A stretch of DNA of 64,000 nucleotides from Octopus sinensis (GCF_006345805.1 NC_043020.1:10788001-10852000), one strand, 5' to 3'; counted from the first letter of the stretch, positions 1,740 to 50,500 are shown. The notes: generated by a model from the letters alone, not told the origin. Program-made: numbers and translations.

Positions 1740-1900
1740 CACTTTAAGGTAATATCTGATGGCCAGTTTGTAGAAAGACAAATCAACAGAATAATCCGCT
1801 AGCATCTCATATTGTTTCATCAGGCTCTTGATATTCTCGCTATCTGATGATTTTTTCTCTAGTGTTGTCAGTTTGTCCTGGACTATTTCACTCTTCTGAG
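1740..1900 (-). CDS. TONSL: TONSL exon 7 ([11 protein letters not shown]...[26 protein letters not shown])
   Basis: Acceptor TTTTCTTCTCCAACAG|, donor GTG|GTATGT, 161 nt, phase 1-0. Resembles human [25 protein letters not shown]. Confidence 0.88.
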
Positions 1901-2925: not shown

Positions 2926-5900
2926 TTGTCCCCCTAGCATTGCTTGACAACCGATGCTGGTGTGTTTATGTCCCCGTTACTTAGCGGTTCAGCAAAAGAG
3001 ACCGATAGAATAAGTACTGGCCTTACAAAGAATAAGTCCCGGGGTCGATTTGCTTGACTAAAGTCGGTGCTCCAGCATGGCGACAGTCAAATGACTGAAA
3101 CAAGTAAAAGAGTAAAAGAGTAATGTATTTCTACAGAAATTTGATGACAAATGTGTTAATTTCTGAAGTTAATATATCTTTTTTTATTTCAAAGATTTTA
3201 CCACCATTACTCATACTTCCAGGAATGTCTTAATTTGCAGTTAAGCAATTATTTATATACATACTTGATGACTTCTTTTGATAATACTTATGTATTATAC
3301 GTCGTTATCATCACCATTCTCATTGTTGCTGATTTAACTTTTGCATGCTTGCATGGGTCAGATAGAATTTGTTAAGTTAGATATTTTACAATGGGATGCT
3401 CTTCCTCTTGCTAACCCTCACTAGTTTCTAAGCCATGTAATATTTCCCCTTGGCCATGTTTTCACAAAAGACCAAAAATATATGACCCCTCTTGTATGAT
3501 GGTGACTCTTACTCTTTTACTTGTTTCAGTCATTTGACTGCGGCCATGCTGGAGCACCGCCTTTAATCGAGCAACTCGACCCCGGGTCTTATTCTTTCGT
3601 AAGCCCAGTACTTATTCTATCGGTCTCTTTTTGCCGAACCGCTAAGTAACGGGGACATAAACACACCAGCATCGGTTGTCAAGCGATGTTGGGAGGGGAC
3701 AAACACAGACACACAAACATATACACACACATATATATATACATATATACGACGGGCTTCTTTCAGTTTCCGTCTACCAAATCCACTCACAAGGCTTTGG
3801 TCGGCCCGAGGCTATAGTAGAAGACACTTGCCCAAGGTGCTACGCAGTGGGACTGAACCCGGAACCATGTGGTTGGTAAACAAGCTACTTACCACACAGC
3901 CACTCCTTATGATGTAGTATTTCTCAGCATTGAATTATGGATTTATATTGAACAGTAGAGATGGATTGAATTATTTTAAACTGCATTATTACATAGATTT
4001 ATATCAGAAAATAACTCACCAATGCTATAAAATTTTTTCAGTTTCCTGTCATCATTGAAGCCAATGTTAACCAGCTTTTTCAAAGAATGGCGTGCTACTC
4101 CGTATTGTCCAGCTTCAAAGCATATCTGGAAAGGCAATGTGAGAGAAACCAAAAATAGGGCTTAGAAGAGCAAAATATAAGCATGGACATAGAAGGCAGT
4201 GTGTGGTGGTTTAAATAAACATAGTCGTCAGTAAGTATTGTCTTGAGGCCTAGGACTCATAGGACTGGTTGCCTAGATTCCATGGCATATAAGTAACCAA
4301 GATCACGGATCTTTTCGGTTTGAACGGTAGTTTTTAAAAATAATTTCTAGGTGACTAAAAAAATGTTAAACTTCGTATACTGGTAGAATGTGTTTATAAA
4401 ACATCTTTTTCTCTTGGTTTTATTGAGAAAATTCTACGGTTTGTAAGATATTTGTTGTTTTTTTTCCTTCAATTTCTTCAATTTCAACCAATCAATGACG
4501 TCTATTGAGGTAAAAAAAAACATTCTGTGCCGTATGAATATGTCCCTCGTTTAAGAAACAGATTGGGATCTTTTTGGTTTGAACGGAAGTTTTTAACATA
4601 ATTTCTAGGTAACTAAACACTTTTAAACTTCGTATACTGGTAGAATGTGTTTATAAAACATCTTTTTCTCTTGGCTTTATTGAGAAAATTCTACAGTTTG
4701 CAAGATATTTGTTGGTTTTTTTTTCCTTCAATTTCTGCAATTTCAACCAATCAATGACGTCCACTGAGGTAAAAAAAACATTCTGTGCTGTATGAATATG
4801 TCCCTCGTTTAAGAAACAGATTGGGTTTATTTACATTTGTGAAGAAAAAAAGATACCCTTCCCCCCACCCCTAACCCTTAACCCTAAAACAGATTGAAAT
4901 GCAATAGATCGATACTAGGGTCATAATTATGGGTGACAATTTCATATGACACCGCTAGAAAAAACTGCCGTTCAAACCGAAAAGATCCCAGATCACAATG
5001 GTCCCCCTGAACAGGACACCGATCCTTTGCAGAGTTACCCATTTATAACTGAGTGAATTGGAGCAGTGGGAAATGAAGGGTTTTGTTCAAGAACACAATG
5101 CACCGCCCAGTCTAGGAACTGAAACCGCGATCTTGCAATCATGAGTGCAACACTTTAGCTACTAGGCCGCATGACTTCTCTGTTATAAGAAGGAAAGGAA
5201 AAGAAAGAAAAATATTCAATATTCATGGCTTCATTTCGCCTACAACACATGGAACCTCTCTTCCCTTTCAGATCGAGGGGGGGGACCCCTTTCGGTCACG
5301 ACACTGACCATGGGATTGCACCTAGAAAGTTACCCTCCTAGTTACAAGTCTGGGCAAGATGGTTTATGGAAGACCAGCAGTCGCCCATGCATACCGGCCT
5401 CCCCTCTCCACGCCACCAGTGTTATCCAAGGGAAAGGCAAAGGGGCCGACACAGCTTGGCACCAGTGACGTCACAACTCATTTCTACAGCTGAGTGAACT
5501 GGAGCAACATGAAATAAAGTGTCTTGCTCAAGAACACAACACGCAGCCCGGTCCGGGATTCGAGCTCACAACCTCATGATCGTAAGCTCGACGCTCTAAC
5601 CACTGAGCCTATGCCTTCTCTCCTTTCAGATACATTTCAGTTTTAACTACAAGACATGGAATTCTCGCTTCCCTTTCAACTACAGTATTTGATGGCATAA
5701 AACACTCATGAACATATTAGATGCACCCCAATTTCAGCATGTAACATTGGCAAAACTACACATATAGGACTTAGGGTAATTTTTTGAGATATTTTTTAAG
5801 GAAAATATGGACTTGTACTTGTGGCGACAATCACCCTGGGCGGGTTGAGTCGGCTTCTACTAACACCCTCGAGGCATCTCGAACCAAAGTCCATCCCCTC

Positions 5901-13066: not shown

Positions 13067-16000
13067 TACGACAGGCTTCTTTCAGTTTCCGTCTATCAAA
13101 TCCACTCACAAGGCATTGGTCGGCCCGGGGCTATAGCAGAAGACACTTGCCCAAGATGCCACGCAGTGGGACTGAACCCGGAACCATGTGGCTGGTTAGC
13201 AAGCTACTTACCACACAGCCACTCCTGCGCCTTTATCATCATCATCATCTTCATCATTTAGTGTCCGTTTTCCATGCTGGCATGGGTTAGGCAGTTTGAA
13301 TGAAACTGGTAAGCTGGAGAGCTGTACCAGGGTCCAGTTTGATTTGGCTTGGTTTCTACAGCTGGATGTCCTTCCTAATGCCAACTGGTTAAATGGTTAA
13401 CCAATTGATGAATAAAAACGATACAAAATAGAACCAGTGTGTGTATGTGTGTTTATAATTGGCATAATGATCCATCTAAGACACACTACAACCACCACAC
13501 CATTGGTTATGATGATGAGAGTTCCAGAACAGCTTCATCATCATCGTCATCATTGTTTAACGTTCGTTTTCCATGCTAGCATGGGTTGGATGGTTCAACC
13601 GGGGTCTGGGAAGCCAGAAGGCTGCATCAGGCTCCAGTCTGATCTGGCAGTGTTTCTACAGCTGGATGCCCTTCCTAACGCCAACCACTCCGTGAGTGTA
13701 GTGGCTGCTTTTTACGTGCCACCGGCACAGATGCCAGGCGAGGCTGGCAACGGCCACGATCGGTTAGTGCTTATTACGTGCCACCGGCACGGAAGCCAGT
13801 AAAGGCGGCGCTGGCATTGGCAACAGAACAGCTTGCTTGTGAAATTAACCTAGAAGAGGTTGGAAACTTCACAGATATGCGTAACCTTGAAGTTGTTATC
13901 AGGGAGATTCTGAATGATAAAGGATGTGACATGGTTGGCCCTTTGAAATACAGGTACTACACATTTTTGCCAGCTGAGTGAACTGGAGCAACATGAAATA
14001 AAGTGTCTTTCTCAAGGACACAACATGTTGCCAGGAATTGAACTTATCACCTTACAATCATAAGCCAAGCACCCTAACCACTAAGCCACAAGTCTTCACT
14101 TTATGTAAATCATAGAGACACCTCATGTCACCCTATTCCACACTCTAGTCAATCACAGAGTTTTATTGTAAAAATTGTAAAATTAATTCATCTACCCACA
14201 CAATATAAGCAGCTCAACAGGTTAAGATTACTTTTGACACGTTTCATAGGAACTAACTCACTTCCTTCCTTTAATCGTATTATGCTGTGGTGTTTCACCT
14301 GTAATAAATGCAACCTATGATACCTATGACATTTGTCAAAGAAAACAGCAACTTTGTGAATGTGAAATGAAAAAATGAAACAAATGATTGATTGATTGAT
14401 CAAATGTTTAATGAAACAATCAATTAGTTCAGTGGTTCCCAAACTTTTTGGCGTCGCGACCCACAATTTATCACACCAGTTTATGACGACCCACTTAACT
14501 CTACTGAGTAAAAACATTAATGAAACATTAATCAAAGCTAATGAGTAATTTTATAACTTTTTGCGTCCCACTAAGATTCCATTCGCGACCCATCTGTGGG
14601 TCGCGACTCATAGCTTGGGAACCACTGGATTAGTTAATTGGTTAAATAGTTAACCTATTGAGAAATAAATAATAAAGAAGTGAAAACAACTAGCGTGTGT
14701 AAATAATTGGTATAATGACCCTCCTAAGATACAACAAAACCAATTCATGCAAAGAAGAGAAAGCTCTTAATTTTTTTCTGCAGATAAGATTCTCAGATAA
14801 GCAATCAGTACACTGATGAGTGGTTGGCATTAGGAAGGGTATCTAGTCATAGAAACCATGGCAAAACAGATAATGGAGCCTGGAGCAGCCCCCCCCCCAG
14901 TCTTACTAGCTCCAGTCAAACCATCCAACATGGAGGCACATGATGTAGTGGTTACATCAGTGGACTCGTGGTCGAGGGGTCGCGGGTTCGACTCTCAGAC
15001 CAGGTGATGTGTGTGTGTTTATGAGCGAAACACCCAAGCTCCATGCAGCTCTAGCAGAAGGTAATGGCTAATTTTTGCTGACTCTTTCACCACAACTTTC
15101 TCTCACTCTTTCCTCCTGCATCTTGCAGCTCACCTGCGACGGACCGGCATCCCGTCCAGGTGGGGAACCTATACGCCAAGGAAACCGGCCCTTATGAGCT
15201 AGGTATGGCTCGGAAAGGAACAAACAAACTCTAACCACTTGGTGGGGTGAAATGTGAGGCCCTACATAACACTTTGAGGCAGTATTTAGATCATTTCTGA
15301 ATAGTATGTAGCTTGGTGAAATATTGGTTACTATTAATCATGATATAGTTTAGTCTCCCAGATAAGCTTTACTTATAGGTGGGGAACCTCTACGCCTAGG
15401 AAACTGGCCCTTATGAGCCAGGCATGGCTCGAGAAGGAACAAACAAAAACCATCCACCCCATGCCAGCATGGAAAACAGATTTAAATGATGACGATGATG
15501 ATGATTAACAGAGATGTGTACTGTACAAATTGCGATGCAGGTAATTTAGATGAACAGCAACTGTGAATCAAGGTACAGGAAGAAAGATCTTTTCAGGCTA
15601 GGGCGCATGATAAATAAAATACACTTGGTCTATGCTGTAAAGTGGTCGGCGACGTGAACAGTATCTGATCGTAAAACCATGACATATCCAGCAACATCAT
15701 CATCATCATCATCATCATTTAGCGTCCGTTTTCCATGCTAGCATGGGTTGGACGGTTTAACTGGGGTCTGTGAAGCCGGAAGGCTTCATCAGGCCCAGTC
15801 AGATTTGGCAGTGTTTCTACGGCTGGATGCCCTTGAGAACAATAATGTTTTGTTGTTTTTTTTTGTGTGTGTGAGTGTTGCTGTTTATGCCAGGTGATTA
15901 CGGAGTATGTTAGGAGGAAGGCGGATGAGATACTTACCCAAGTATGGAAGAAAATAGATGACAGTGGTGATGATAGTGATGGTGATGATGATGATGATGA

Positions 16001-19000
16001 TGACGATGAGGGCGAGTCCTCTGAAAAATAGCTTACCTGGAATTTCAAGAGGTAACTGTCAGTCAACAGGTGTTTGTCTTTGTATGGAAGAAAATAGATG
16101 ACAGTGGTGGTGATAGTGATGGTGATGATGATGATGATGATGATGATGAGGGCGAGTCCTCTGAAAAATAGCTTACCTGGAATTTCAAGAGGTAACTGTC
16201 AGTCAACAGGTGTGTGTCTTTGTATGGAAGAAAATAGATGACAGTGGTGGTGATAGTGATGGTGATGATGATGATGATGACGATGAGGGCGAGTCCTCTG
16301 AAAAATAGCTTACCTGGAATTTCAAGAGGTAACTGTCAGTCAACAGGTGTTTGTCTTTGTATGGAAGAAAATAGATGACAGTGGTGGTGATAGTGATGGT
16401 GATGATGATGATGATGATGATGATGAGGGCGAGTCCTCTGAAAAATAGCTTACCTGGAATTTCAAGAGGTAACTGTCAGTCAACAGGTGTTTGTCTTTGT
16501 ATGGAAGAAAATAGATGACAGTGGTGGTGATAGTGATGGTGATGATGATGATGATGACGATGAGGGCGAGTCCTCTGAAAAATAGCTTACCTGGAATTTC
16601 AAGAGGTAACTGTCAGTCAACAGGTGTTTGTCTTTCATCTTTAGTGCCGATTTTATAGCAGATTCTATGTGTTGTAGAGCAGCGGAAGAACTCCCAACCA
16701 AATTGTAATGGTCAGCCAACAGAAACTGACACCGAAACAATTCTTCAGCCAAACCATTTGTTCTGCGAGTGAGAGAGAGAGAGAGAGTGACAAAAAGAGG
16801 AAAAACTAAACTCCCATAACCCTTAGTTACTCCCATGACAGACATGCTGCCACTAACAACAACAAACAAGGGTCTCCCTCTTGGTCTACATTACTCATGT
16901 TCCCCATGGTTACCTCTAGATATTTATAATCTTCAACCAATGAGAAACACTATGAGGTCACTCATTATTATCGGATCTTTTCGGTTTGAATGGCAGTTTT
17001 TAACATAATTTCTAGGTAACTAAAAAATTTTAAACTTCGTATACTGGTAGAATGTGTTTATAAAACATCTTTTTCTCTTAGCTTTATTGAGAAAATTCTA
17101 TAGTTTGTAAGATATTTGTTGTTTTTTTTCTTCATTTTCTGCAATTTCAACCAATCAGTGACGTCTATTGAGGTAACAAACATTCTGTGCCGTATGAATA
17201 TGTCCCTTGTTTAAGAAACAGATTGGGTTTATTTATATTTGTGAAGAAAAAAAGATACCCTTCCCCCACCCCTAACTCTAACCCTAAAACAGATTGAAAT
17301 GCAATAGATCGATTCTAGGGTCATAATTATGGGTGACAATTTCATGACACCGCTAGAAAAAACTGTCGTTCAAACCGAAAAGATCCTTATTATCAAACCA
17401 CAAACTACCATCTTAAAAGAAGGTGGCCACGTTTGATAAGTTTGTCTTGGGTTCAGTGAACCATGGAAATAAAAAATAGGACGGTCACAGCCGGGTCCTT
17501 GATCATAGATCTACTGTTGCTGGGCATAATGTAGTTTAACCCTTTCGTTACTGTATTTATTTTGAGATGCTCTGTGTTTCTTACAATTATTTTAAATATA
17601 ATAAAGAATGTAGTAAAATAACTTAGTTATCATTCAGCTAGTGTTAGGAACGTAAATTGTGACTAAGGCTTGGTGGAAGATTTTAATTCAAAACTTATGA
17701 AAACAAGACATTTGTACTACAGAGCCAGGGGCAGTTTCAGTCAGTTTGGAATCGAAAGGAATAAATATAACAAAGAATTTAATAAAATAACTTAGTCACC
17801 ATTCAGCTAGTGTTAGGAGCATAAATTGTGACTAAGGCTTGGTGGAAGATTTTAATTCAAAACTTATGAAAACAAGATATTTGTACTACAGAGCCAGGGG
17901 CAGTTTCAGTCAGTTTGGAATCAAAAGGAATAAATATAACAAAGAATTTAATAAAATAACTTAGTCACCATTCAGCTAGTGTTAGGAGCATAAATTGTGA
18001 CTAAGGCTTGGTGGAATATTTTAATTCAAAACTTATGAAAACAAGACATTTTACCACAGAGCCAGAGCCGGTTTTGGCCAGGTGAGTAACAAAAGGGTTC
18101 AGATAAAATCTTGAAACGATGGAGTGGTCACAGCAGAGAATGATTTTAATCATAGGTCTGCCCAACCAGTGCTGACCTGGGGTGAAACAACAACAGCAAA
18201 TTTCATCATCGTCATCATCATATGATGTCCACTTTTCCATACTTGTATGAGTTAGACATAATTTGTTGAGGCAGATTTTCTACAGCTGGATGCCCTTCCT
18301 GTCACCAACACTCACCTGTTTTCAAGCAAAGTCACATTTGTCTGTATTTAGACATGTTTTTCATGTAGGACTGGAAACAACCACACTGCTTGCATGACGG
18401 TGAGGCTCACTTACAGTCATCGCATGATGATAAATCAAGAGTACATACACATATGATGCATATTCTCTTTACTCTTTTACTTGTTTCAGTCATTTGACTG
18501 CGGCCATGCTGGAGCACCGCCTTTAATCAAGCAACTCGATCCCGGGACTTATTCTTTTGTAAGCCCAGTACTTATTCTATCGGTCTCTTTTGCCGAACCG
18601 CTAAATAACAGGGACATAAACACACCAGCATCGGTTGTCAAGCAATGCTAGGGGGACAAACACAGACACACAAACACAAATACGCATATATGTACATATA
18701 TACAACGGGCTTCTTTCAGTTTCCGTCTACCAAATCCACTCACAAGGCTTTGGTCGGCCCGAGGCTACAGTAGAAGACACTTGCCCAAGGTGCCACGCAG
18801 TGGGACTGAACCCAGAACCATGTGGTTGGTAAACAAGCTACTTACCACACAGCCACTATGATGGGTTTCTTTCAGTTTCAGTCTGCCAAATCCACTCACA
18901 AGACTTTAGTTGGCCCAGGGCTGTAGTAGAACACACTTGCCCAAGGTGGCATCGAGTGGGACTGAACCCGAGACGACATAGTTGAGAAGCGAATTTCTTA

Positions 19001-37973: not shown

Positions 37974-40900
37974 TCCTCCTCCTCCTTTTTCTTCTTTCTC
38001 CCTACCAAGAATTCACAATGACCTCCAACCCACAAGAGTACACAAGAGAGACACAGACAGGCAGAAACAAGGAAAAAGCCACTTGCATTTGAACATTGAT
38101 ACAAATATTCTTTTAAAAAACTTTTCTTTTAATTTTTCTAAATTTAATTGTTTAATTGTTACAGTTGAAAAAGTCTCAATGACTGAAACCGGTACTGAAA
38201 TGTTTTTTATGAAATTATTTTAGCATTTTCTATCTTGACTTTTTTTCCATATATACATATATATAGTAGAAATAGGTTACAAAAAGAAAATATAAGATAC
38301 ACGTGGAAATGTAAGGGTAAAATATGAAAAATCAACGAAAATGCACAGCGATGAATAGCTTTTTGCCGAAACCATGGTTCGCTTTGTTCTCTTACTTTAT
38401 TATCATCTTATAATCATCTCATAATGACTTTTATGACTCTTATTACTACCTCAGTCCATCTAAAAGTACATATATACATATATATATATATATATAATAA
38501 AATATTAGGGAATAAATCCAAACTTACAGGGAAAAATCAGATTTAGGATTGAATCCTATTTTATAGTAAAATATTATATTATATTAAATTAGAGATAAAA
38601 CCACTATTAGGCAAATCATACAATGAAAAACTTAAACCAATACATAAGATTAATTAATTTATATTATTTTAAATATATATCAAAATTATTAAAAAAAGAT
38701 AATTAGTATAACACTACGATCGTTTCATGGCTGTCCAATTCGTAAAAATTCGAGTTATAGTCATTCTTCAGGTGATTGAAATATCAGACTCTCTCTCTAT
38801 ATATATATATATATAGCAAGGCAACTAACCTCATCTAAAGAAGAGGTGGAAAGAACTCTTCTTTAGATGAGTTAACAGAAGTTGTATGAGGTTAGTTGCC
38901 TTGCTAGAAATACCAACAAAATTTCCCTTAAATCACATCACAGATAGTAGCAGCAATGATGATGATGATGATGATGATGGATGTGGGAGGAGGAGATAAA
39001 GGGAACAGGAAAGAAAAAACAAAAGAATAAAATGATACAAGAATGACAGGGTAACTTACCGAGCTATTGATATGCACCGTTCCATATAATTCTTGAATTC
39101 CTGGAAATTGCTTCGGCCAGTCTGTACGACTCCTGTTAGGTACAAGATATACAAATGATGTTACTGAGAAGGCAAAGAAGTGGCAGGACTATCAGAAAGG
39201 CAAATATAGCACACCACCCTCGCTCTGGGTTCAAATTTCATTTTTTGAGGGTTAAAATAGAACCCTCAAAATAGAACCAGTGATACTCAAGGGAACACGA
39301 GTGGAACACTGAGTTGATAAGGGATATCTGCCAAGTAACTGAAGGGGTTAAGGTTTTAAGTTAAGTTAATTTTTGGGCTCAAAAAGCAAAAAGCAAGGCC
39401 ATGTAGGGGGACATGGAGTTATGTACAGGGAGGGTGTTCATGCAAAGAGTTCAGGCCATTTCTGGTCAAGAGAGATTTTGAACCGAGCGGTCGTCGGCAT
39501 CTTCACTATCTCATCCGGCAGCTTATTCCACGGATCCGCAACCTGGACGGAGAAAGCCCCTCTCCTTCGATTGAGATGAAATCGTCGCAGATAGAGCTTT
39601 TCGGAGTGATCCCGCAGCCCACGCTCTGGGGCAGGAGTGAAGAACAGCTCTTTCGAGAGGTTACACTTTCCGCTTATGATGTTGTGAGCAAGAATGAGAT
39701 CACCACGGCAGCGGCGTTTTTCTAGAGAATAAAGGTCGAGCGTCTTCAGCCTTTCTTCATAAGACAAATAGTTCAACTACAGCTGTTGTCTTGTATCCTT
39801 GTTCAAGACTCAAAATAGCTTGGTACATCTGGTCGCATGTAGGTACCACAATGTAGGATTTTTGCATGCATCATCCTGTGATGCACCTGAACGCATCATC
39901 AATGATGTTTCCTGGAGTTGTTGGAGTTTTGTGCCTTTCAACAATCAGACACCCTCACCCAAGTGACGCAGCCACCGTTGGTCAAGCCCCGGGTGATATA
40001 TATTTCTTTATTGCCCACAAGGGGCTAAACATAGAGAGGACGAACAAGGACAGACAAAGGGATTAAGTCGATTGCATCGACCCCCAGTGCGAAACTGGTA
40101 CTTGTATTTATCGACCCCGAAAGGATGAAAGGCAAAGTTGACCTTGGTGGAATTTGAACTCAGAACGTAACAACAGACAAAATATCTATTTCTTTACTAC
40201 CCACAAGGGGCTAAACACAGAGAGGACAAACAAGGACAGACAAACGGATTAAATCGATTACATCGACCCCCCCAGTGCGAAACTGGTACTTATTTAATCG
40301 ACCCCGAAAGGATGAAAGGCAAAGTCGACCTCGGTGGAATTTGAACTCAGAACGTAACGACAGATGAAATACCGTTAAGCATTCTGCCCGGTGCGCTAAC
40401 GTGTCTGCCAGCTCGCCACCTTCCCCAGGTGATATATCGAGTTTAGTATTACTCATCGCAGCACACCTCCTGATCCACAGCCACTCTGAGACAACCTTTG
40501 CTGCCTCCATAGCCGACTTAATGGCCCCTGTGATGCTTGGCATGTTATAGACTCAGCATGAGAACACACCTGCAAACCCTCAGCATCCCACATCAATAGA
40601 AACCGTCTTTCATGCCACTGATTGTTTCAGTGTAACTCCACCAGCTCAGCAGATATTTCACACATTTCCTCTCATCTACCTCCAAAATACAGTCCTTCCA
40701 GGGAATGGATGGAGGGTTCTAACAGAACCACCTGTTTGAATGTTTTTAAGATCAGCTCAGTAAGCAGAGAAAGCATTGTGGAATTAGTGAGTGCTTCCAT
40801 AGCTTGTAGTACCAAGTTCGGATCTTTTCGGTTTGAACGGCAGTTTTTTCTAGCGGTATCATATGAAATTGTCACCCGTAATAATGACCCTAGTATCAAT

Positions 40901-43900
40901 CTATTGCATTTCAATCTGTTTTAGGGTTAGGGTTAGGGGTGGGGGAAGGGTATCTTTTTTTCTTCAGAAATGTAAATAAACCCAATCTGTTTCTTAAACA
41001 AGGGACATATTCATGCGGCACAGAATGTTTTTTTACCTCAATAGACATCATTGATTGGTTGAAATTGCAGAAATTGAAGAAAAAACAACAACAAATATCT
41101 TACAAATTATAGAATTTTCTCAATAAAGCCAAGAGAAAAAAAAATGTTTTATAAACACATTCTACCAGTATACAAAGTTTAAAAGTGTTTAGTTACGTGG
41201 AAATTATTTTAAAAAACTGCCGTTCAAACCGAAAAGATCCCCAAGTTCAATACTTGCCAATGACTGACCTCTATAGTTCTTTGTTGAATGATACCTTTTC
41301 TATCCAAGAAGATTTGCTTTACCAAAATGTGAAATTTGAATGACCTAAGTCAGTTAATAAAAAAGAAAATGCTCACTTTTGCATAACTTTCAGTAAAGCC
41401 CTTGGAAAGAGATCTTTCAAATCATACCTACCATCTTGAGAAAGAAAAGGACTCATTTGAGAATACAGACCCAGATACATTATATCTGAATGTTATATCT
41501 GCTGGAGTTGGGTAGACATAAGACCATACAATAAGTGGAAAACTTCTGCGTGATTGTGTGACCAGCAAGAAATAGCAGCCAAATCTCCCTTAACCCTTTC
41601 GTTACTATATTTCTGACCAAATTACACCCCTTATGTGTTTCAATTAATTTCTAACGTAATCATAAATTTAGTCTGGTTTCATTAAACAACTATAACTTTT
41701 TTATTTATCGATATATTAATCTGATTTTTGGAAGATAATTTAATGAAATATTCTCAACCAATTCTATACTATAATTTTTGTCACAAAGTGACTCTATTTG
41801 CAGGTAGATACAGGTAAATTCAACAAAATATAAAATTATTAAAATTTTGTTCAAACATCGCTATATTAGCTAATATTCAATTGGGTATACAACAAAATTT
41901 CACGATAGAATTTGTTATTCTGGGTAACTTTCTAATACCCATAATAATATTTATGGCAAAATAGGCCTTAATTTCATTTAAGGTTGTGGGAAATAACAAA
42001 CTATCCTTTCTTTCGTTTTGTTTACGTTTAGCGTAACGGTTCGTTTTCGCTGTAATGATTTCAAATAGGCTCATTCGAAAAAGTAAATAGAAATAGCCTA
42101 AGGCTTTACCCTTCTGGGAAAGTCTGTGGCTTGGTCCAGTTTCTGCAGAAAAATCACCGAAAGAAACAGTTTTTAAATTTTCACTCCATTCAGGTGCCAA
42201 TTCGTTTTCTTTATCGCTATCGGAGATCTCAGATTCACTGTTTTCACTTTCGGAAAATGAAACATCAGATTCATTATCAAATACCACATGCTTTTTTTTT
42301 TCAGTCATAGAGTTAGATTTATGAAGGTCTTCAGTAGAAAATCCTTCGAATTCTGACTCGCTGCTTGATATAATGAAATTCGTATCCATTTTTTGTCAGA
42401 ATTACAAATTTTGAAAACACAATAGGAACAAATTTCGGAAAAAAATCTCCCAAAATTCACGGAATTAAAATTACACTTCGATTATTGTACAAAACTGTAG
42501 TTGAACTGTTTACGAAGTATAATACGTGTTTTCACGAATGTACTAAAGAGATTTGCTCTGATATTCTTATTTAAATATGAATAGGTAAATTCGGGCGGCT
42601 TTGGGCGGTTTGGTTTCATAAACCAAAATTTTTTTCGGGCGGCTTTGGGCGGTTTGGTAACGAAAGGGTTAAATAATATGCTACCACCTTCATAAAACGG
42701 ACTCCATAAATAATATACTTCTGGCACCACATAGAAAGCTCTCATGCTAGCACCTTATAAAAAGTACTCATGCTGGCATCACATAAAAAGCACCAATACT
42801 GGTGTCACATAAAAAGTATCCAGTACACAGTAAGGGGGTTGGCATTAGGAAGGGCATCCAGCAGTAGAAACCATGACAGAACAGCTCCTGTCAAACCATC
42901 CAAAATCTGCCAGAATGGAAAACAGACATTCAAATCGAAATCGAATTGAACCAGCCAGGATCCCTGGTCTGGTGGTACGTAAAAAGCACTATCCGACTCG
43001 TGGCCGATGCCAGCACCGCCTTGAATGGCTTCCGTGCTGGTGGCACATAAAATACACCAATCCGACCGTGGCTGCTGCCAGCCTCGCCTGGCACCTGTGC
43101 AGGTGGCACGTAAAAAGCACCCACTACACTCACGGAGTGGTTGGCGTTAGGAAGGGCATCCAGCTGTAGAAACATTGCCAGATAAGACTGGAGCCTGGTG
43201 CAGCCTTCTGGCCTCCCAGATCCCCAGTCGAACCGTCCAACCCATGCTAGCATGGAGAACGGACGTTAAACGATGATGATGATGATGATGATGAATGACA
43301 ATGATGATAATGTAAACTGCTGCTGCTGAGACCCCCTTCGGTCATGACTGACCATGGGATTGCACCTAGAAAGTTACCCTCCCTGGCACAAGTCCGGGCA
43401 AGGTTGTTTATGGAAGACCAATAGTCGCCCATGCATACCAGTCTCACCTTTCCACGCCACCAGTGTTATCCAAGGGTAAGGCAAAGGGGGCCGATACAGC
43501 TTGGCACCTGTGACGTCGCAACTCATTTCTACAGCTGAGTGAACTGAAGCAACGTGAAATAAAGTGTCTTGCTCAAGAACACCACAACACACAGCCCGGT
43601 CCAGGATTCGAACTCACAACCTCACGATCGTAAGCTCGACGCTCTAACCACTGAGCCATGCACCTTCACACAATAATGTAAACAATTTCTAAATAAAGAC
43701 GTAATCACAGAGTAAACAACAACAACAACAACAACAACAAAAGTACAAACACAGAAAAGACTTACCCATATTCAGGAAGAGCCGTGCCTTCATCGTCATG
43801 TACTCCTTATGGCTGAGATCATTTTTCATGCTTTCACAGAGTTCCAGAGCATGTATAAATGCATCTTCAGCCTTGGAATAAGCTGTCCGTCCTTCATCGG

Positions 43901-44554
43901 TTTCAGCCTGAAAGAGGTAAGTCCTTCCAATTGTGGCCCATGCTCTTTGTTCTTCAACAGTGTTCTTCATGCTACGTGCCAGTGACAGGTAACGTTTCTG
44001 AAGTTGAATTGCTTTGTTGAAGTCACCCAGATCACAGTAGCATTCACTGAGCATGCGACATGCAACAGCCGCACCTAAGGTGTCGTTATACGTCTCACAG
44101 ATGGACAAGTCTTGGTTATATTCCTCAATAGCTTCTTTGAAGAAACCTATGTGTATATATAAATAGAAATATTATTTCTAAGTCTCTCTAAAGGAGACAA
44201 CGGCAGCGGTACTGGATATTAACAGTTATTGCCAAGCTAATATGGCAGTCCATAAATATAGCAAGCTAGAGGCGATGGCCCCTTGGAGCTAATCAACGGC
44301 AGCTTTCGTCCTATATTTATGGACTGCCATATTAGCTTGGCGATAACTGATAATATGTGTATATATACTCTTTTACTTGTTTCAGTCATTTGACTGCAGC
44401 CATGCTGGAGCACCGCCTTTAATCGAGCAAATCGACCCCGAATAAGCCCAGTACTTATTCTGTCGGTCTCTTTTGCCGAACCGCTAAGTAACAGGGACAT
44501 AAACACACCAGTATCGGTTGTCAAGCAATGCTAGGGGGGCAAACAGACACACAA

Positions 44555-44598
<44 letters not shown>

Positions 44599-47500
44599 GA
44601 CGGGCTTCTTTCAGTTTCCGTCTACCAAATCCACTCACAAGGCTTTTTCGGCCCGAGGCTATAGTAGAAGACACTTGCCCAAGATGCCATGCAGTGGGAC
44701 TGAACCCGGAACCATGTGGTTTGTGAACAAGCTACTTACCACACAGCCACTCCTGCGCCTATATATATATTTATATATATATCTATATGCATATATATTG
44801 AACACACATACATATAAATATATATATATTCTTTTATCTTATAACTTGTTTCAATCATTTGACTGCGGTCATGCTGGAGCACCGCCTTTAGTCAAACAAA
44901 TCGACCGCAGGACTTATTCTTTGTAAGCCTAGTACTTATGCTATTGGCCTCTTTGCCGAACTGCCAAGTAAATACACCAAGTGATGGTAGGTGAACAAAC
45001 AGACACACAAATACATACATACATATATATATATCAACTCGTGTGTTCCTTTTCATCCTTATGCATATATATATATATATCATTTTGTGGAAGAGCGTAG
45101 GCTCGAAATGTTAAAGACTTTTTCACTTTCTGAATGTTATACTAATACATTCGTTTGTTGTCTACACCACCTGTCTTCGTCTTTTGTTTGTATTTTTTTT
45201 TTGTGAATTCTCCCCCTACCTATCTACATACCTACATACATACATACACAACAGGCCTCTTTCAGATTCTGTTTACTAAATCCACTCACAAGGCTTCAGT
45301 CAGCCTGAGGCTATAGTAGAAGACACTTGCCCAAGGTGCAACGCAGTGGGACTGAACCCGGAACCATGTGGTTGGGAAGTAAGCTACTTACCACACAGCC
45401 ATGTATATATATATATATATTTTTTTTTCTTTACTTGTTTCAGTCATTTGACTGCGGCCATGCTGGAGCACCGCCTTTAGTCGAGCAACTCGACCCCAGG
45501 ACTTATTCTTTTGTAAGCCCAGTACTTATTCTATCGGTCTATTTTGCCGAACCGCTAAATAACGGGGACATAAACACATCAGCATCGGTTGTCAAGCAAT
45601 GCTAGGGGGACAAACACAGACACACACACGCATATATATATATATATATATACATATATACGACGGGCTTCTTTCAGTTTCCGTCTACCAAATCCACTCA
45701 CAAGGCTTTGGTCGGCCATAGGCTATAGTAGAAGACACTTGCCCAAGGTGCCACGCAGTGGGACTGAACCCGGAACCATGTGGTTGGTTAACAAGCTACT
45801 TACCACACAGCCACTCCTGCGCCTATTCATAGGAGTGAGTTCCATGAATTTGAAGTAAGATACTAAGCAGACTATATAGTCTGCTTAGAATCTTCCTTCA
45901 AATTCATGGAACTCACTCCTATAAATTCATAAGGATATTTACACTCTCTAGGATGTTTGGAAAACATATATGTGATTTAGCTGATGAATACTTGACATTA
46001 TATTTGCTGTAATATTTGCAGCTTTAAATAAAATGTTTTAGTATGAAACAATTGTACTAAACTACCGATCCATTCTTGTTGCCTTTTTCTTGGTTATATA
46101 TATATATATATATAAAATAAAGAAGGGAGGCGGTATAAGATGTATATATTTATTTCACCAGTTGACAGCCATATAACAACAATCATTTCACACTCTTTAT
46201 CATTCAAAAACAATTTACTTTAGTGTTTAATAAACTATTAGTAGCATGAAACTATTATGTAGCTCTTTCGGTTGTATATTTAATTTGATATATATATATA
46301 TAAACATACATAACACTTGTTTTTATATGTGTGTATATTTGTGTACATATATATGTGTATAAAAACAGAATGTTTATAGGCTTAAGCTTTCACTTATCAC
46401 CGTTTTTAACTAAACAAAGAATATATATATATATATGTATATACACACACAACAGCCATATAACAACAATCATTTCACACTCTTTATCATTCAAAAACAA
46501 TTTACTTTAGTGTTTAATAAACTATTAGTAGCATGAAACTATTATGTAGCTCTTTCGGTTGTATATTTAATTTGATATATATATATATAAACATACATAA
46601 CACTTGTTTTTATATGTGTGTATATTTGTGTACATATATATGTGTATAAAAACAGAATGTTTATAGTCTTAAGCTTTCACTTATCACCGTTTTTAACTAA
46701 ACAAAGAATATATATATATATATATGTATATATACACACACTGGTCTGGTGGTACGTAAAAAGCACTATCCGACTCGTGGCCATGGCACGTAAAATACTC
46801 CAATGCGACCGTACGACAGGCACCCTTGCCAACCCCCTTTGCTTGTGAAGACATGTTGGGGCAAGCGAAATCGAAATCGAATTGAACCAGCCAGGATCCC
46901 TGGTCTGGTGGTACGTAAAAAGCACTATCCGACTCGTGGCCGATGCCAGCACCGCCTCGACTGGCTTCCGTGCCGGTGGCACATAAAATACACCAATCTG
47001 ACCGTGGCCGTTGCCAGCCCCGCCTGGCACCTGTGCAGGTGGCACGTAAAAAGCACCCACTACACTCACGGAGTGGTTGGCGTTAGGAAGGGCATCCAGC
47101 TGTAGAAACATTGCCAAATTAGACTGGAGCCTGGTGCAGCCTTCTGGCTTCCCAGAACCCCGGTCGAACCGTCCAACCCATGCTAGCATGGAGAACGGAC
47201 GTTAAACGACGATGATGATGATGATGATGATATATATATATATATATTTCTTTACTACCCACTGTGGAGTGCTCAGCCACTTACACGTTAATTTCACGAG
47301 CAGGCTGTTCCGTTGATTCGGATCAACCGGAACCCTCGTCGTCGTCGTTTTCTGACGGAGTGCTTCCATATACACATAAACACACAGACACTCATATATT
47401 CAAAGCTAGACATAAACACACAGACAATGTCACAAACTGATTGAATGATTATCACAGAAAATCTAGATGAAACAACACTGACCATATTTTCGGAAAATCT

Positions 47501-50500
47501 CACCAATTCCGTTACATAACTCGGACACTTCTGTGAACTTGTTCCTTCGCTCAGCATCTTTTTTTTCTTTTTGTAACTCTGGAGATAAAAATTGAAAATG
47601 AAAATTTTATGAAAATTATGAATTTGAAGATATGATCTGGAAAAAAAACTTCTTAACCCTTTAGCATTTAAACCGGCCATATCCAACCAAAAGTATTCTG
47701 CCTGTTTTATGTTCAAACTGACCAGATCTGGTCTTTCACACCAACCCTACAATATCGTTTTAAAAATTAACATCTGCCTCATCAAATTCTCATAGTTAAA
47801 AGATAATGCATTTAAACTGGCCATATCTGGCCAAAAGTACTCTGCCTGTTTTATGTTCAAACTGACCAGATCTGGTCTTTCACACCAACCCTACAATATC
47901 ATCTTAAAAATTAACAGCTACCTCATCAAAATCTCATAGCTACAAGATAAGGCATGATTAGTTTAAAAGAATGTGGATAAAAAAGCATTAATTTTGGCAG
48001 AATAATGAGAACACTAAAGAGTTAACTACACAGTTATGCCTGCTTACGAAGGCCAACCTCAAAATGCTTAAGCAGATGAAGTATTGAAGGCCAATCTCGA
48101 AAACGCTGAATCTTACAAAGGAGATGACAGTGGATGGAGATATATGGTGCATTGCTGTTCTCTAGAAGACCACCCACAACAACAGAATTGGGATCGTACA
48201 ACTAAGGTTCCACGTAAAAAGCTTTGGTGTTGGTGCCACATGAAAAGCACCCAGTATACTTTATGGAGTGGTTGGAAGGACATCCAGCCATAGAAATCAA
48301 ACCAAAATAGACTATGGAACCTGGCGTGGCCCCTGGCCTTGCTAGTTCCCATCAAGCCATTCAACTCATGCCAGCATGGAAAAACAGACAAATGTTGATA
48401 ATCACCGTGATCACCGTGACCGACCAGGCCATCAGATGTTGCTACACATCGCTGGTCACAATGCGCTTTGCATTGTTTTAGCCTTCAAATGACGCCACCC
48501 AGCTGGCTAAGCGAGCAGGCCAACAGAGGAAAGGGTGAGAGAAAGTTGTGACGAAAGAGTACAGCAGGGGTCGCCACCACCCCCAGCCAGAGCCTTGTGG
48601 AGCTTTAGGTGTTTTCGTTCAATAAACACTCACAACGCCAGGACTGGGAATCAAAACCACGATCCTACGACTGCGAGTCCACTGGGCCATTGCGCCTCCA
48701 CGTTGATGATAATAGATACAAGCAAATACTAACCACATCTCATTAAAATTGCTGGCCTTATACTTTAAATACATGGTTCCGGGTTCAGTCCCACTGCGTG
48801 GCATCTTGGGCAAGTGTCTTCTGCTATAGCCCCGGGCCGACCAATGCCTTGTGAGTGGATTTGGTAGACGGAAACTGAAAGAAGCCTGTCGTATATATGT
48901 ATATATATATATATATATATTTGTGTGTATGTGTTTGTGTGTCTGTGTTTGTCCCCCTAGCATTGGTTGCTAACCAACCACATGCTGGTGTGTTTACGTC
49001 CCCGTCACTTAGCAGTTCGCCAAAAGAGACCGATAGAATAAGTACTGGGCTTACAAAGAATAAGTCCCGGGGTCGATTTGCTCGACTAAAAGGCGGTGCT
49101 CCAGCATGGCCGCAGTCAAATGACTGAAACAAGTAAAAGAGTAAAGAGTAAAAGAGTATTCTACAGTGTGGTGTAGACAAAAATAAAATGAGGAATCTCT
49201 AAAGAAAAATTAAATACCGTTATTCCTCGAGTATAATCTGCATTTTTTCCCCAAAATTTAAAGGTCAAAATCCCCAGTGCATCCTATATACGAGGTTAAA
49301 AATGAAAATTATTTTATAAGCAATGTCCGAGTCTCTATTTTTGCTGTCTGGCTATGTTTATTCAGCTGCATTTTGTGATGTCGGGCGCGAAAATACCTTA
49401 AGCTAAGCCTGAAAGCAATGAAGTCATAAAAGAATCATCCATAACTTGCAGTAAGCAACATTTATTAAACGTTATTACTGTTATTTCTTTATTTTCTGCA
49501 AACAAAATGCACAAAAAAGCTACACGTTTGCATTATATTATATATACAATAATAATAAAAGACGATACCGTGTACGTTTTTACAAGCCAAGGACGTTATA
49601 TAGACCTCCTCGACTCAAGCTAGAGAAGGGGTGCGTATTATACACAAGGTTTAGGTTTTTCAGAGGTACAGCCCCCTAAAATGCACAAAAAAGCTACACG
49701 TTTGCATTATATTATATATACAATAATAATAAAGGACGATACCGTGTACGTTTTTACAAACCAAGGACGTTATATAGACCTCCTCGACTCAAGCTAGAGA
49801 AGGGGTGCGTATTATACACAAGGTTTAGGTTTTTCAGAGGTACAGCCCCCTAAAATGCACAAAAAAGCTACACGTTTGCATTATATTATATATTTGTGAT
49901 TTTGTGATTTTTTTGTGACCCCCTTCGGTCATGAATGACCATGGGATTGCACCTAGAAAGTTACCCTCCTAGACACAAGTCTGGGCAAGGTTGTTTATGG
50001 AAGACCAGCAGTCGCCCATGCATACCAGCCTCCCCTCTCCATGCCACCAGTGTTATCCAAGGGAAAGACAAAGGTCGATACAGCTTGGCACCCATGACGT
50101 TGCAGCTCATTTCTACAGCTGAGTGAACTGGAGCAATGTGAAATAAAGTGCCTTGTTCAAGAACACAACACGCAGCCCGGTCCGGGAGTCGAGCTCACAA
50201 CCTCACGATCGTAAGCTCGATGCTCTAACCACTGAGCCATGCGCCTTCACTTGTTATATATACAGGTTATATATACAATAATAATAAAGGACGTTACTGT
50301 ATACATTTTTATAAACCAAGGACGTTATATAGACCTTCTTGACTCAAGTTAGAGAAGGGGTGAGTATTATACACAAGGTTTAGGTTTTTCAGAGGTACAG
50401 CCCCTAAAAATCCTTTGCGTATTATACTCGAAGATTTACGGTATATAAGAAAAGTTAAAATTTAGGGATTTGAAACAAAGACATCAAGATTCAATATAGA

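What the first reader, a model, noticed from the sequence alone, without database searches (positions are those of the whole stretch)
15942..16635. The 3' end and donor site of TONSL exon 5 are amplified five times with a dimeric higher-order pattern
Seen: units of 137/140/137/140 bp, each with 45 nt of exon ([15 protein letters not shown]), an identical CAG|GTAAGC donor and a (GAT)n tract. The tracts alternate between a GAC-interrupted form and pure (GAT)8, giving a 277-bp higher-order repeat. Each junction also creates a pyrimidine tract plus AAG (TCTATTTTCTTCCATACAAAG|), which defines potential 41-nt pseudo-exons. Read-through to distal donors hits a stop (TNTC*). Inference: four decoy donors and frameshifting mini-exons could modulate TONSL splicing or NMD, or be a polymorphic VNTR.
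Basis: partly seen in the sequence, partly recalled or inferred. Interest (0 to 1): 0.75.

Follow-up and report, generated by a model that had tools for sequence, protein, structure and literature searches.

The report
Minisatellite repeating a TONSL-like splice donor
A 137-140 bp piece covering the end of one exon and the start of the next intron of a TONSL-like DNA-repair gene is repeated five times in tandem, leaving four spare copies of the splice donor inside the intron; the same layout is already known from several human genes, where the spare donors are mostly silent.

Summary
On the minus strand, 16635-15942 holds five head-to-tail units of 137/140/137/140/140 nt. Each unit carries the last 45 nt of an exon ([15 protein letters not shown]), an identical CAG|GTAAGC donor and 92-95 nt of intron with an (ATC)n tract. 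Units 1 and 3 are identical, and units 2 and 4 differ by one base, so the pattern is A-B-A-B-A' (2.5 dimers of 277 nt).

The gene is TONSL/TONSOKU-like. Six exons in the window splice into one open 329-aa TPR protein, but only when the first donor (16590) is used. Every distal donor or 41-nt mini-exon runs into the stop TNTC*.

The only relative I could fetch has one copy of the junction and no array, so the array arose after the two lineages split. The unit is not a dispersed repeat. Minisatellites of this size cover 10% of the window.

This is a known kind of feature: human F7, IFI6, CBS, LMNB2 and PDGFA carry minisatellites whose first monomer spans an exon-intron boundary, with pseudo-donors that are mostly silent.

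The best reading is a young, probably neutral, VNTR-like array. A regulatory decoy or NMD role is neither tested nor needed. Whether the assembly is right, and which donors are used, cannot be checked here.

The parts
16591..16762 (-). Authentic exon (called E5 here), 172 nt. It encodes (R)[57 protein letters not shown]. Its last 45 nt belong to repeat unit U1.
   Evidence: Acceptor ctcactcgcag| and donor CAG|gtaagc. Conserved with L001 14895-15020 by tblastx. Its splice phases fit the neighbouring exons.
15942..16635 (-). The whole tandem array: five units, 694 nt, in the pattern A-B-A-B-A'.
   Evidence: TRF. Unit boundaries. Pairwise differences of 0-3 substitutions and 0-3 gap positions.
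16499..16635 (-). U1 (137 nt): the authentic exon tail, the authentic donor (GTAAGC at 16590-16585) and a tract ATC-GTC-(ATC)5.
16359..16498 (-). U2 (140 nt): pseudo-donor GTAAGC at 16453-16448, tract (ATC)8, and candidate 41-nt pseudo-exon at 16494-16454.
16222..16358 (-). U3 (137 nt), identical to U1: pseudo-donor at 16313-16308 and pseudo-exon at 16354-16314.
16082..16221 (-). U4 (140 nt): equals U2 except for A>C in AAAGACA[C]ACACC. Pseudo-donor at 16176-16171 and pseudo-exon at 16217-16177.
15942..16081 (-). U5 (140 nt): GTC-type tract with one more ATC, plus a C>T change. Pseudo-donor at 16036-16031 and pseudo-exon at 16077-16037. Its 3' end abuts unique intron sequence.
15932..15941 (-). 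TTGG|GTAAGT: another strong donor-like site (7/9 consensus positions) directly after the array. It is part of the original intron.
   Evidence: In a single-copy state it would give a stop-free, in-frame 99-nt extension (ORF 15719-16066). It is not conserved in L001.
4020..4125 (-). Next exon (E6), 106 nt, [35 protein letters not shown](G). Its acceptor is in phase 0, matching donor 1.
   Evidence: Intron 5 is 12,465 nt.
39060..39132 (-). Upstream exon (E4), 73 nt. Intron 4 is 22,297 nt.
   Evidence: tblastx with L001 12818-12907. Splice sites and phases.
43766..44146 (-). Upstream TPR exon (E3), 381 nt, containing [16 protein letters not shown].
   Evidence: Pfam TPR_12 at E 3.2e-10.
47483..47578 (-). 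Upstream exon (E2), 96 nt, [31 protein letters not shown](G).
1740..1900 (-). Downstream exon (E7), 161 nt, [54 protein letters not shown].
   Evidence: It falls within the colinear TONSOKU alignment.

Best explanation
This is a young minisatellite that arose after this lineage split from the L001 species. Its first monomer spans the exon 5 / intron 5 junction of a TONSL/TONSOKU-like gene.

How it arose (inferred). A segment of about 137-140 bp, made of the last 45 nt of the exon, the donor and about 92 nt of intron with an unstable (ATC)n microsatellite, was duplicated in tandem. An internal copy then gained a G>A change and one more ATC. The resulting A-B dimer (277 bp) was duplicated again, probably by unequal exchange or replication slippage. 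The result is A-B-A-B-A'.

What follows directly from the sequence. The exon is intact and is followed by its authentic donor. Copies 2-5 of the exon tail and donor lie inside the 12.5-kb intron 5. Only donor 1 gives an open reading frame into the next exon.

What is inferred by analogy. As in the human minisatellites of the same layout, the most upstream donor is the one normally used. The four pseudo-donors are silent or leak at a low level into transcripts that carry a premature stop. The array has no selected function and is likely to vary in copy number.

An added inference that would explain tolerance. Every unit contains CAG|GT, preceded by a consensus-type branch site (CTGAC, branch A at -23) and a moderate pyrimidine tract. 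Splicing from any donor to the CAG of any later copy would therefore recreate exactly the original CAG|GTAAGC junction. Use of a distal donor need not be fatal to the mRNA.
For: - Array structure and significance.
- Exon map: consistent splice phases through six exons and an open 329-aa frame only with donor 1. Donors 2-5 add 137/277/414/554 nt and all stop at TNTC*, as do 1-3 mini-exons.
- Gene identity: one colinear match to TONSOKU 7t7t over query 9-304, E 1.1e-17. Pins and GPSM2 match only as several short stretches of the same ~90 residues.
- Arose after the split from L001: orthologous locus L001 has the same exon end ...FLKFQ|GTAAGA once, and no tandem repeat within the 5 kb that follow.
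- Young: units differ by at most 3 substitutions, and the two dimers by 1 in 277.
- Not a transposon: outside the array the unit matches the window only through its (ATC)n tract.
- Ordinary background process: 16 arrays with periods of 63-287 bp cover 10.2% of the window. With about 12 exon boundaries, one hit is roughly what chance gives.
- Precedent: minisatellites whose first monomer spans an exon-intron boundary in F7, IFI6 (6-16), CBS, LMNB2 and PDGFA. The authentic upstream donor is used alone, or with the one or two nearest pseudo-sites (PMC1557585).
- Self-restoring splicing: YTNAY motifs at -27 and -23 and 60% pyrimidines before each CAG|, compared with 65% for the real E3 and E4 acceptors. 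AG|gt...ag|GT created by tandem duplication was shown to be spliceable (PMC3265369).
Against: - No RNA data and no reads were available, so donor usage, polymorphism and even copy number are unverified.
- The pseudo-donors are strong: 8 of 9 consensus positions, the best among the donors I mapped for this gene in the window. In short-intron model substrates, two strong sites at least 45 nt apart splice almost wholly from the intron-proximal site (PMC3413131). That rule would predict mostly unproductive mRNA here.
- The pyrimidine tract of the proposed CAG| acceptor is interrupted by GAAA. The AG is not conserved, since L001 has CAA|GT.
- Only one relative, about 50-70% identical at the protein level, was available. 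The age of the array is therefore loosely bounded.
Confidence: 0.65

Rival explanations
1. Regulatory decoy array. The four extra donors and the 41-nt mini-exons are used at a meaningful level, divert TONSL pre-mRNA into transcripts with premature stops, and so tune TONSL dosage through NMD.
For: All alternative choices give a stop. The pseudo-donors are strong. The intron-proximal preference for strong duplicated sites (PMC3413131) would favour distal donors. In IFI6 and CBS the two nearest pseudo-sites are used constitutively (PMC1557585).
Against: The array is absent from the one available orthologue. It is very young and one of many arrays in the window. No special RNA structure was found. 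In F7, LMNB2 and PDGFA such sites are silent. A 41-nt exon behind an AAG acceptor with no YTNAY branch motif within 15-45 nt is a poor exon.
Confidence: 0.12
2. Assembly artefact. The true locus has one unit, or a different number, and the array or its copy number was created by misassembly, for example two (ATC)n alleles stitched in alternation.
For: The two unit types differ mainly in microsatellite length, as two alleles would. Near-identical 277-bp repeats are hard to resolve with short reads. No reads could be examined.
Against: The window has no N gaps. The copies carry three private point differences in a consistent nested pattern. Fifteen other arrays of similar size in the same window suggest a real genomic property. 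A 694-bp array is well within a single long read.
Confidence: 0.12
3. Damaging allele. The array strongly diverts splicing to distal donors and is a hypomorphic or null TONSL allele, carried heterozygously or compensated in some way.
For: The intron-proximal rule for strong duplicated donors, and all distal choices end in a stop.
Against: The precedents with the same architecture keep normal splicing. Long flanking introns of 22 and 12 kb favour recognition of the 172-nt exon with its nearest donor; this rests on the established exon-definition model and was not tested here. Splicing between CAG|GT copies could restore the message.
Confidence: 0.06

Closest known systems
Human F7 intron 7 minisatellite (37 bp x 5-9), whose first monomer spans the exon 7 / IVS7 boundary (PMC1557585)
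   Same: Head-to-tail monomers. The first monomer contains the exon's last bases and the authentic donor, so identical donors are reiterated in the intron. Use of most pseudo-sites would be out of frame.
   Different: The monomer here is 137-140 bp and carries 45 nt of exon, against 4 nt in F7. There are five copies with a dimeric pattern. The donor is much closer to consensus (CAG|GTAAGC against UGG|gugggu). Polymorphism and exclusive use of the upstream site are shown for F7 and untested here.
LMNB2 (100 bp x 10-15) and PDGFA intron 4 (81 bp x 16-18) boundary-spanning minisatellites, as summarised in PMC1557585
   Same: Monomers of similar length that reiterate the donor in the intron. Only the authentic donor is reported to be used.
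   Different: They have more copies. They are vertebrate genes. No dimeric pattern is mentioned in that summary.
IFI6 (6-16) intron 2 and CBS intron 13 minisatellites (PMC1557585)
   Same: Reiterated donors.
   Different: Short monomers and many copies. Usage is documented there and not here.
Intron creation by tandem duplication of a segment containing AGGT (Rogers model; PMC3265369, PMC4974935)
   Same: Tandem copies each contain AG|GT, so the stretch between two copies has a donor at one end and an acceptor at the other. Removing it restores the unduplicated message.
   Different: Here the AGGT was already an exon-intron junction. No new intron position is created; the existing intron is lengthened by 557 nt.
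Recursive splice sites / ratchet points in long introns (PMC8605326, from the abstract only)
   Same: An acceptor-like CAG sits next to a strong donor, GTAAGC, inside a 12.5-kb intron. Splicing to it would regenerate a donor.
   Different: These sites arose from a duplicated exon end and are not conserved intronic elements. The pyrimidine tract is weak and use is untested.

Membership tests
Minisatellite whose first monomer spans an exon-intron boundary (F7 IVS7 type) | Head-to-tail array of monomers tens to about 100+ bp long | tested here: met
   TRF reports period 140 x 5.0 and 277 x 2.5, with 97-98% matches.
Minisatellite whose first monomer spans an exon-intron boundary (F7 IVS7 type) | The first monomer contains the exon's last bases and the authentic donor | tested here: met
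   U1 is the last 45 nt of E5 plus CAG|GTAAGC. E5 is placed by splice phases and conservation.
Minisatellite whose first monomer spans an exon-intron boundary (F7 IVS7 type) | [quoted passage not shown] | tested here: met
   The 32 nt from the GT onward are identical in all five units, and the -3..+6 positions are the same.
Minisatellite whose first monomer spans an exon-intron boundary (F7 IVS7 type) | Copy number is polymorphic in the population (VNTR) | not testable with these tools
   No reads or second assembly of this species were reachable. Protein searches found nothing above 69% identity, and a DNA scan of metagenome contigs found nothing.
Minisatellite whose first monomer spans an exon-intron boundary (F7 IVS7 type) | The most upstream donor is the one used and the pseudo-sites are silent or minor | not testable with these tools
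   No transcript data. Only the coding consequence could be computed: the frame is open only with donor 1.
TONSL / TONSOKU gene | N-terminal TPR array colinear with TONSOKU | tested here: met
   A single stretch, query 9-304 to chain 60-361 of 7t7t, E 1.1e-17. 40% identity to human TONSL residues 41-169 as recalled from memory, which is a lead and not a database record.
TONSL / TONSOKU gene | Closer to TONSL than to other TPR proteins (Pins/GPSM2) | tested here: inconclusive
   Pins and GPSM2 have lower E-values (2.6e-23), but through 3-4 overlapping repeat-level matches to the same ~90 residues. TONSOKU is the only long colinear match. No named animal TONSL was present in the searchable collections.
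TONSL / TONSOKU gene | Downstream acidic region, ankyrin repeats, ubiquitin-like domain and leucine-rich repeats | not testable with these tools
   The gene runs off the low-coordinate end of the window after E7 (1740).
Recursive splice site (ratchet point) | A functional acceptor (branch site, pyrimidine tract, AG) directly followed by a donor | tested here: inconclusive
   CTGAC and TTGAC at -23 and -27, 60% pyrimidines, CAG|GTAAGC. Sequence pattern only, with no evidence of use.
Recursive splice site (ratchet point) | Conserved in related species | tested here: not met
   L001 has a single CAA|GTAAGA, with no AG and no intronic copies.
Intron gain by tandem duplication of AGGT | Tandem copies each contain AGGT | tested here: met
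   CAG|GT occurs in all five units.
Intron gain by tandem duplication of AGGT | A new intron position arises in formerly continuous coding sequence | tested here: not met
   The junction already exists in L001 at the same codon...KFQ|GTAAG.

The most novel reading that the evidence does not exclude
The array is a copy-number-variable rheostat for TONSL. Each extra strong donor draws a fraction of transcripts into stop-containing products, so alleles with more units make less TONSL. TONSL loss is reported to unleash tandem duplications (PMC13031629). A weakened allele might then feed back on the unusually high load of tandem arrays seen in this window (10% of bases). Against this, the duplications reported for TONSL loss are about 25 kb and 300 kb, not about 0.1-0.3 kb, and nothing here shows that any distal donor is used.
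Probability: 0.03. Interest if true: 0.7.

Novelty: new member of a known kind. Interest (0 to 1): 0.25.

Why it matters
The finding has modest value. It is a clean natural example, outside vertebrates, of reiterated identical donors behind a real exon. The sites are strong (8 of 9 consensus positions) and spaced 137-140 nt apart.

That is the range where two published rules disagree. One says the most upstream site wins, by oriented scanning (F7 work, PMC1557585). The other says the intron-proximal site wins (PMC3413131). RNA-seq from this animal would show which rule holds in vivo for a 172-nt exon flanked by 22-kb and 12-kb introns.

For annotation, it is a warning. Gene predictors may pick a wrong donor here and report a truncated or frameshifted TONSL model.

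Tried and rejected
- The exon-5 peptide alone found no homologue. The larger TPR exon found only five unnamed fragments of at most 69% identity, so no same-species or same-genus sequence was available to test polymorphism or date the array.
- An exact-match scan of metagenome contigs for the exon-donor junction found nothing.
- RNA folding of the whole array gave z = +0.91, less stable than shuffles, so no structure masks or exposes particular donors.
- Rfam and tRNA scans of the window found nothing, so no embedded RNA gene explains the unit.
- Low-stringency BLAST of the unit against the window matched only (ATC)n tracts, so the unit is not a transposon or dispersed repeat.
- Coding potential of the array is ruled out. 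Each unit has stops in two of three frames. Frame 0 is open, but unit lengths of 137 and 140 shift the frame at every junction.
- The plus-strand poly-Asp ORF (15867-16031, 54 aa) ends in every unit and is taken as a by-product of (GAT)n.
- An in-frame, stop-free 99-nt extension to the TGG|GTAAGT site after the array was considered as an ancestral alternative donor. It is not conserved in L001 and is expected by chance at roughly 7%, so it was dropped.
- No microhomology was found at the unit junction (ATAC|AAAG against flanks GATG|AAAG and ATAC|TTGG), so no specific end-joining signature can be claimed.
- A link to TONSL's reported role in suppressing tandem duplications was considered, but the size classes do not match.
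Full report
**1. The observation**

The sequence at 15942-16635 is a genuine tandem array. Tandem Repeats Finder reports exactly these coordinates twice, as period 140 x 5.0 copies (97% matches, score 1318) and as period 277 x 2.5 copies (98%, score 1347). It is the highest-scoring array in the window. The first 32 nt of the intron part occur five times without a mismatch, against none expected in shuffled sequence.

Read on the minus strand, which is the gene's sense, the units are as follows:

| Unit | Coordinates | Length | Tract |
|---|---|---|---|
| U1 | 16635-16499 | 137 | ATC-GTC-(ATC)5 |
| U2 | 16498-16359 | 140 | (ATC)8 |
| U3 | 16358-16222 | 137 | ATC-GTC-(ATC)5 |
| U4 | 16221-16082 | 140 | (ATC)8 |
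| U5 | 16081-15942 | 140 | ATC-GTC-(ATC)6 |

Each unit begins with the same 45 nt, AAAGACAAACACCTGTTGACTGACAGTTACCTCTTGAAATTCCAG ([15 protein letters not shown]). This is followed by GTAAGC and 92-95 nt that include an (ATC)n tract.

U1 and U3 are identical. U2 and U4 differ by one A>C change. U5 carries a C>T change in addition to its extra ATC. The two 277-nt dimers differ at 1 position. Two small corrections apply: the last unit is a third variant, and one exon copy (U4) has a substitution.

**2. The gene and its exons**

Stop-free stretches on the minus strand, tblastx against a related locus, and inspection of splice sites give six exons:

| Exon | Coordinates |
|---|---|
| E2 | 47578-47483 |
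| E3 | 44146-43766 |
| E4 | 39132-39060 |
| E5 | 16762-16591 |
| E6 | 4125-4020 |
| E7 | 1900-1740 |

All have AG acceptors, GT donors and matching phases. Joined, they give an open 329-aa TPR protein. The introns are 3.3, 4.6, 22.3, 12.5 and 2.1 kb long.

Against solved structures, this protein aligns to Arabidopsis TONSOKU (7t7t) as one colinear stretch, query 9-304 to chain 60-361, E 1.1e-17. Pins and GPSM2 have lower E-values, but only through several repeat-level matches to the same ~90 residues.

Human TONSL as I recall it aligns to E3 at 40% identity over 129 aa and to E2 in the right order. This is a lead from memory, not a database record.

I accept 'TONSL-like' with good but not complete confidence. 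The later domains (ankyrin, UBL, LRR) lie outside the window. 'Exon 5' is right if one further exon carrying the ATG lies upstream, and I did not find it.

**3. Coding consequences**

E5 ends in phase 0 at 16591 and E6 starts in phase 0 at 4125, giving ...LLKFQ|ICFEAGQ..., which is the conserved reading.

Using donor 2, 3, 4 or 5 would add 137, 277, 414 or 554 nt. In every case the frame stops at ...[10 protein letters not shown] inside U2. Including one, two or three of the 41-nt pseudo-exons (AAAG|ACAAAC...CCAG|GT) stops at ...KFQTNTC*.

No frame stays open across a unit junction. Two frames have stops in every unit. The third is open, but unit lengths of 137 and 140 shift the frame at each junction. 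The copies are therefore intronic passengers and cannot be a coding repeat.

**4. Origin**

The unit is not a mobile element. Outside the array it matches the window only through its (ATC)n tract.

The one related locus I could fetch is L001, an 86-kb ENA contig whose TPR exon is 69% identical at the protein level. It has the orthologous exons in the same order and the same exon end...WFLKFQ|GTAAGA. That junction is present once, and there is no tandem repeat in the 5 kb that follow. The array therefore arose after the two lineages split.

Its units differ by at most three substitutions, so it is young or is being homogenised.

The outer units U1 and U5, which are anchored in unique flanks, both have the GTC variant. 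The simplest history runs as follows:
- a single unit was duplicated to three copies;
- the middle copy gained G>A and one more ATC;
- the A-B dimer was duplicated;
- U4 and U5 then gained private changes.

I see no microhomology at the junction.

Tandem arrays of this size class are very common here. Sixteen arrays with periods of 63-287 bp cover 10.2% of the window. With about a dozen exon boundaries in the window, one boundary falling inside an array is roughly what chance predicts if such events are tolerated.

**5. How it most likely behaves**

The five donors are identical from at least 45 nt upstream to about 30 nt downstream. They are the best consensus matches among the donors I mapped for this gene in the window, at 8 of 9 positions.

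Two published rules point in opposite directions.
- In the human F7 gene, a 37-bp minisatellite whose first monomer spans the exon 7 boundary places 4-8 identical pseudo-donors in the intron. Only the most upstream site is used, although all are functional when the upstream ones are destroyed. LMNB2 and PDGFA behave alike, while IFI6 and CBS also use the two nearest pseudo-sites (PMC1557585).
- In short-intron model substrates, two strong sites at least 45 nt apart splice almost wholly from the intron-proximal site (PMC3413131).

I favour the first rule here, because the natural precedents share this architecture. In addition, the 172-nt exon sits between 22-kb and 12-kb introns, where recognition across the exon should pair the acceptor with the nearest donor. 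That last point rests on the established exon-definition model and is an inference.

The sequence also offers a safety net. Each exon copy has CTGAC and TTGAC branch-type motifs at -23 and -27, 60% pyrimidines (the real E3 and E4 acceptors have 65%) and CAG immediately before GTAAGC. Splicing from any donor to the CAG of a later copy would regenerate the original junction exactly. This is the same logic by which a tandem duplication containing AGGT was shown to make a spliceable intron (PMC3265369). It also resembles a recursive splice site (PMC8605326, abstract). This step is plausible from the sequence but untested.

It has no YTNAY motif at 15-45 nt, uses the rarer AAG, and defines only a 41-nt exon.

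**6. What was excluded**

- No RNA structure stands out (z +0.91).
- There is no Rfam family or tRNA in the window.
- The plus-strand poly-Asp ORF is interrupted in each unit.
- The in-frame 99-nt extension to the TGG|GTAAGT site after the array is not conserved.

**7. What could not be tested**

No reads, transcripts or second assembly of this species were reachable. Three things remain open: the reality of the copy number, polymorphism, and donor usage.

**8. Verdict**

The feature is a new example of a known kind, a boundary-spanning minisatellite with reiterated donors. It is most likely neutral. A regulatory role is possible but has no support beyond the presence of the sites. Interest is low to moderate, mainly as a natural test of how identical strong donors are chosen, and as a trap for gene prediction.

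Noticed in passing
window, 15 sites, e.g. 15730-15757 (+), 6281-6308 (-), 43231-43258 (-), 47167-47194 (-), and a 179-bp x 3 tandem array at 31542-32078: A dispersed SINE-like element with a (CAT)n head and the core TTTCCATGCTAGCATGGGTTGGACGGTT occurs 15 times on both strands. One truncated copy lies about 110 nt beyond the array in the same intron. From memory the repeat content looks cephalopod-like, but I did not test that.
   Followed up: partly
window 41880-42395 (-), in intron 3 of the TONSL-like gene: Fragment of a piggyBac-type transposase (Pfam PF13843, E 2.5e-9, matching only the first ~58 of 349 profile positions).
   Followed up: partly
whole window; arrays listed: Sixteen minisatellite arrays (period 63-287 bp, 2-5 copies) cover 10.2% of the window. 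Several lie close to other exons of the same gene: 47664-47955, about 90 nt upstream of E2; 4307-4825, about 180 nt upstream of E6; and 17593-18065 in intron 4.
   Followed up: partly
L001 15027-15036: In the related locus, the orthologous exon has an A10 run. As assembled, it puts the conserved end ...QLLNDAWFLKFQ|GTAAGA one base out of frame with the start of the exon. This is probably a homopolymer-length error in that assembly.
   Followed up: no
window 15932-15941 (-): A strong donor-like site, TTGG|GTAAGT, lies directly after the last unit. In a single-copy state it would give a stop-free, in-frame 99-nt (33-aa, serine-rich) extension of the exon. It is not conserved in L001.
   Followed up: yes
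window 39441-39776 (-) and 6624-6830 (+): Two copies of a reading frame beginning L(S/N)[15 protein letters not shown].., which I recall as typical of the C-terminal end of retrotransposon reverse-transcriptase ORFs. Pfam gave no hit for the copy tested.
   Followed up: partly
literature, PMC13031629: A 2026 paper reports that loss of TONSL/TONSOKU causes tandem duplications of about 25 kb and 300 kb in C. elegans and Arabidopsis. It is a curious coincidence for a tandem duplication inside a TONSL-like gene, but the size classes do not match.
   Followed up: partly
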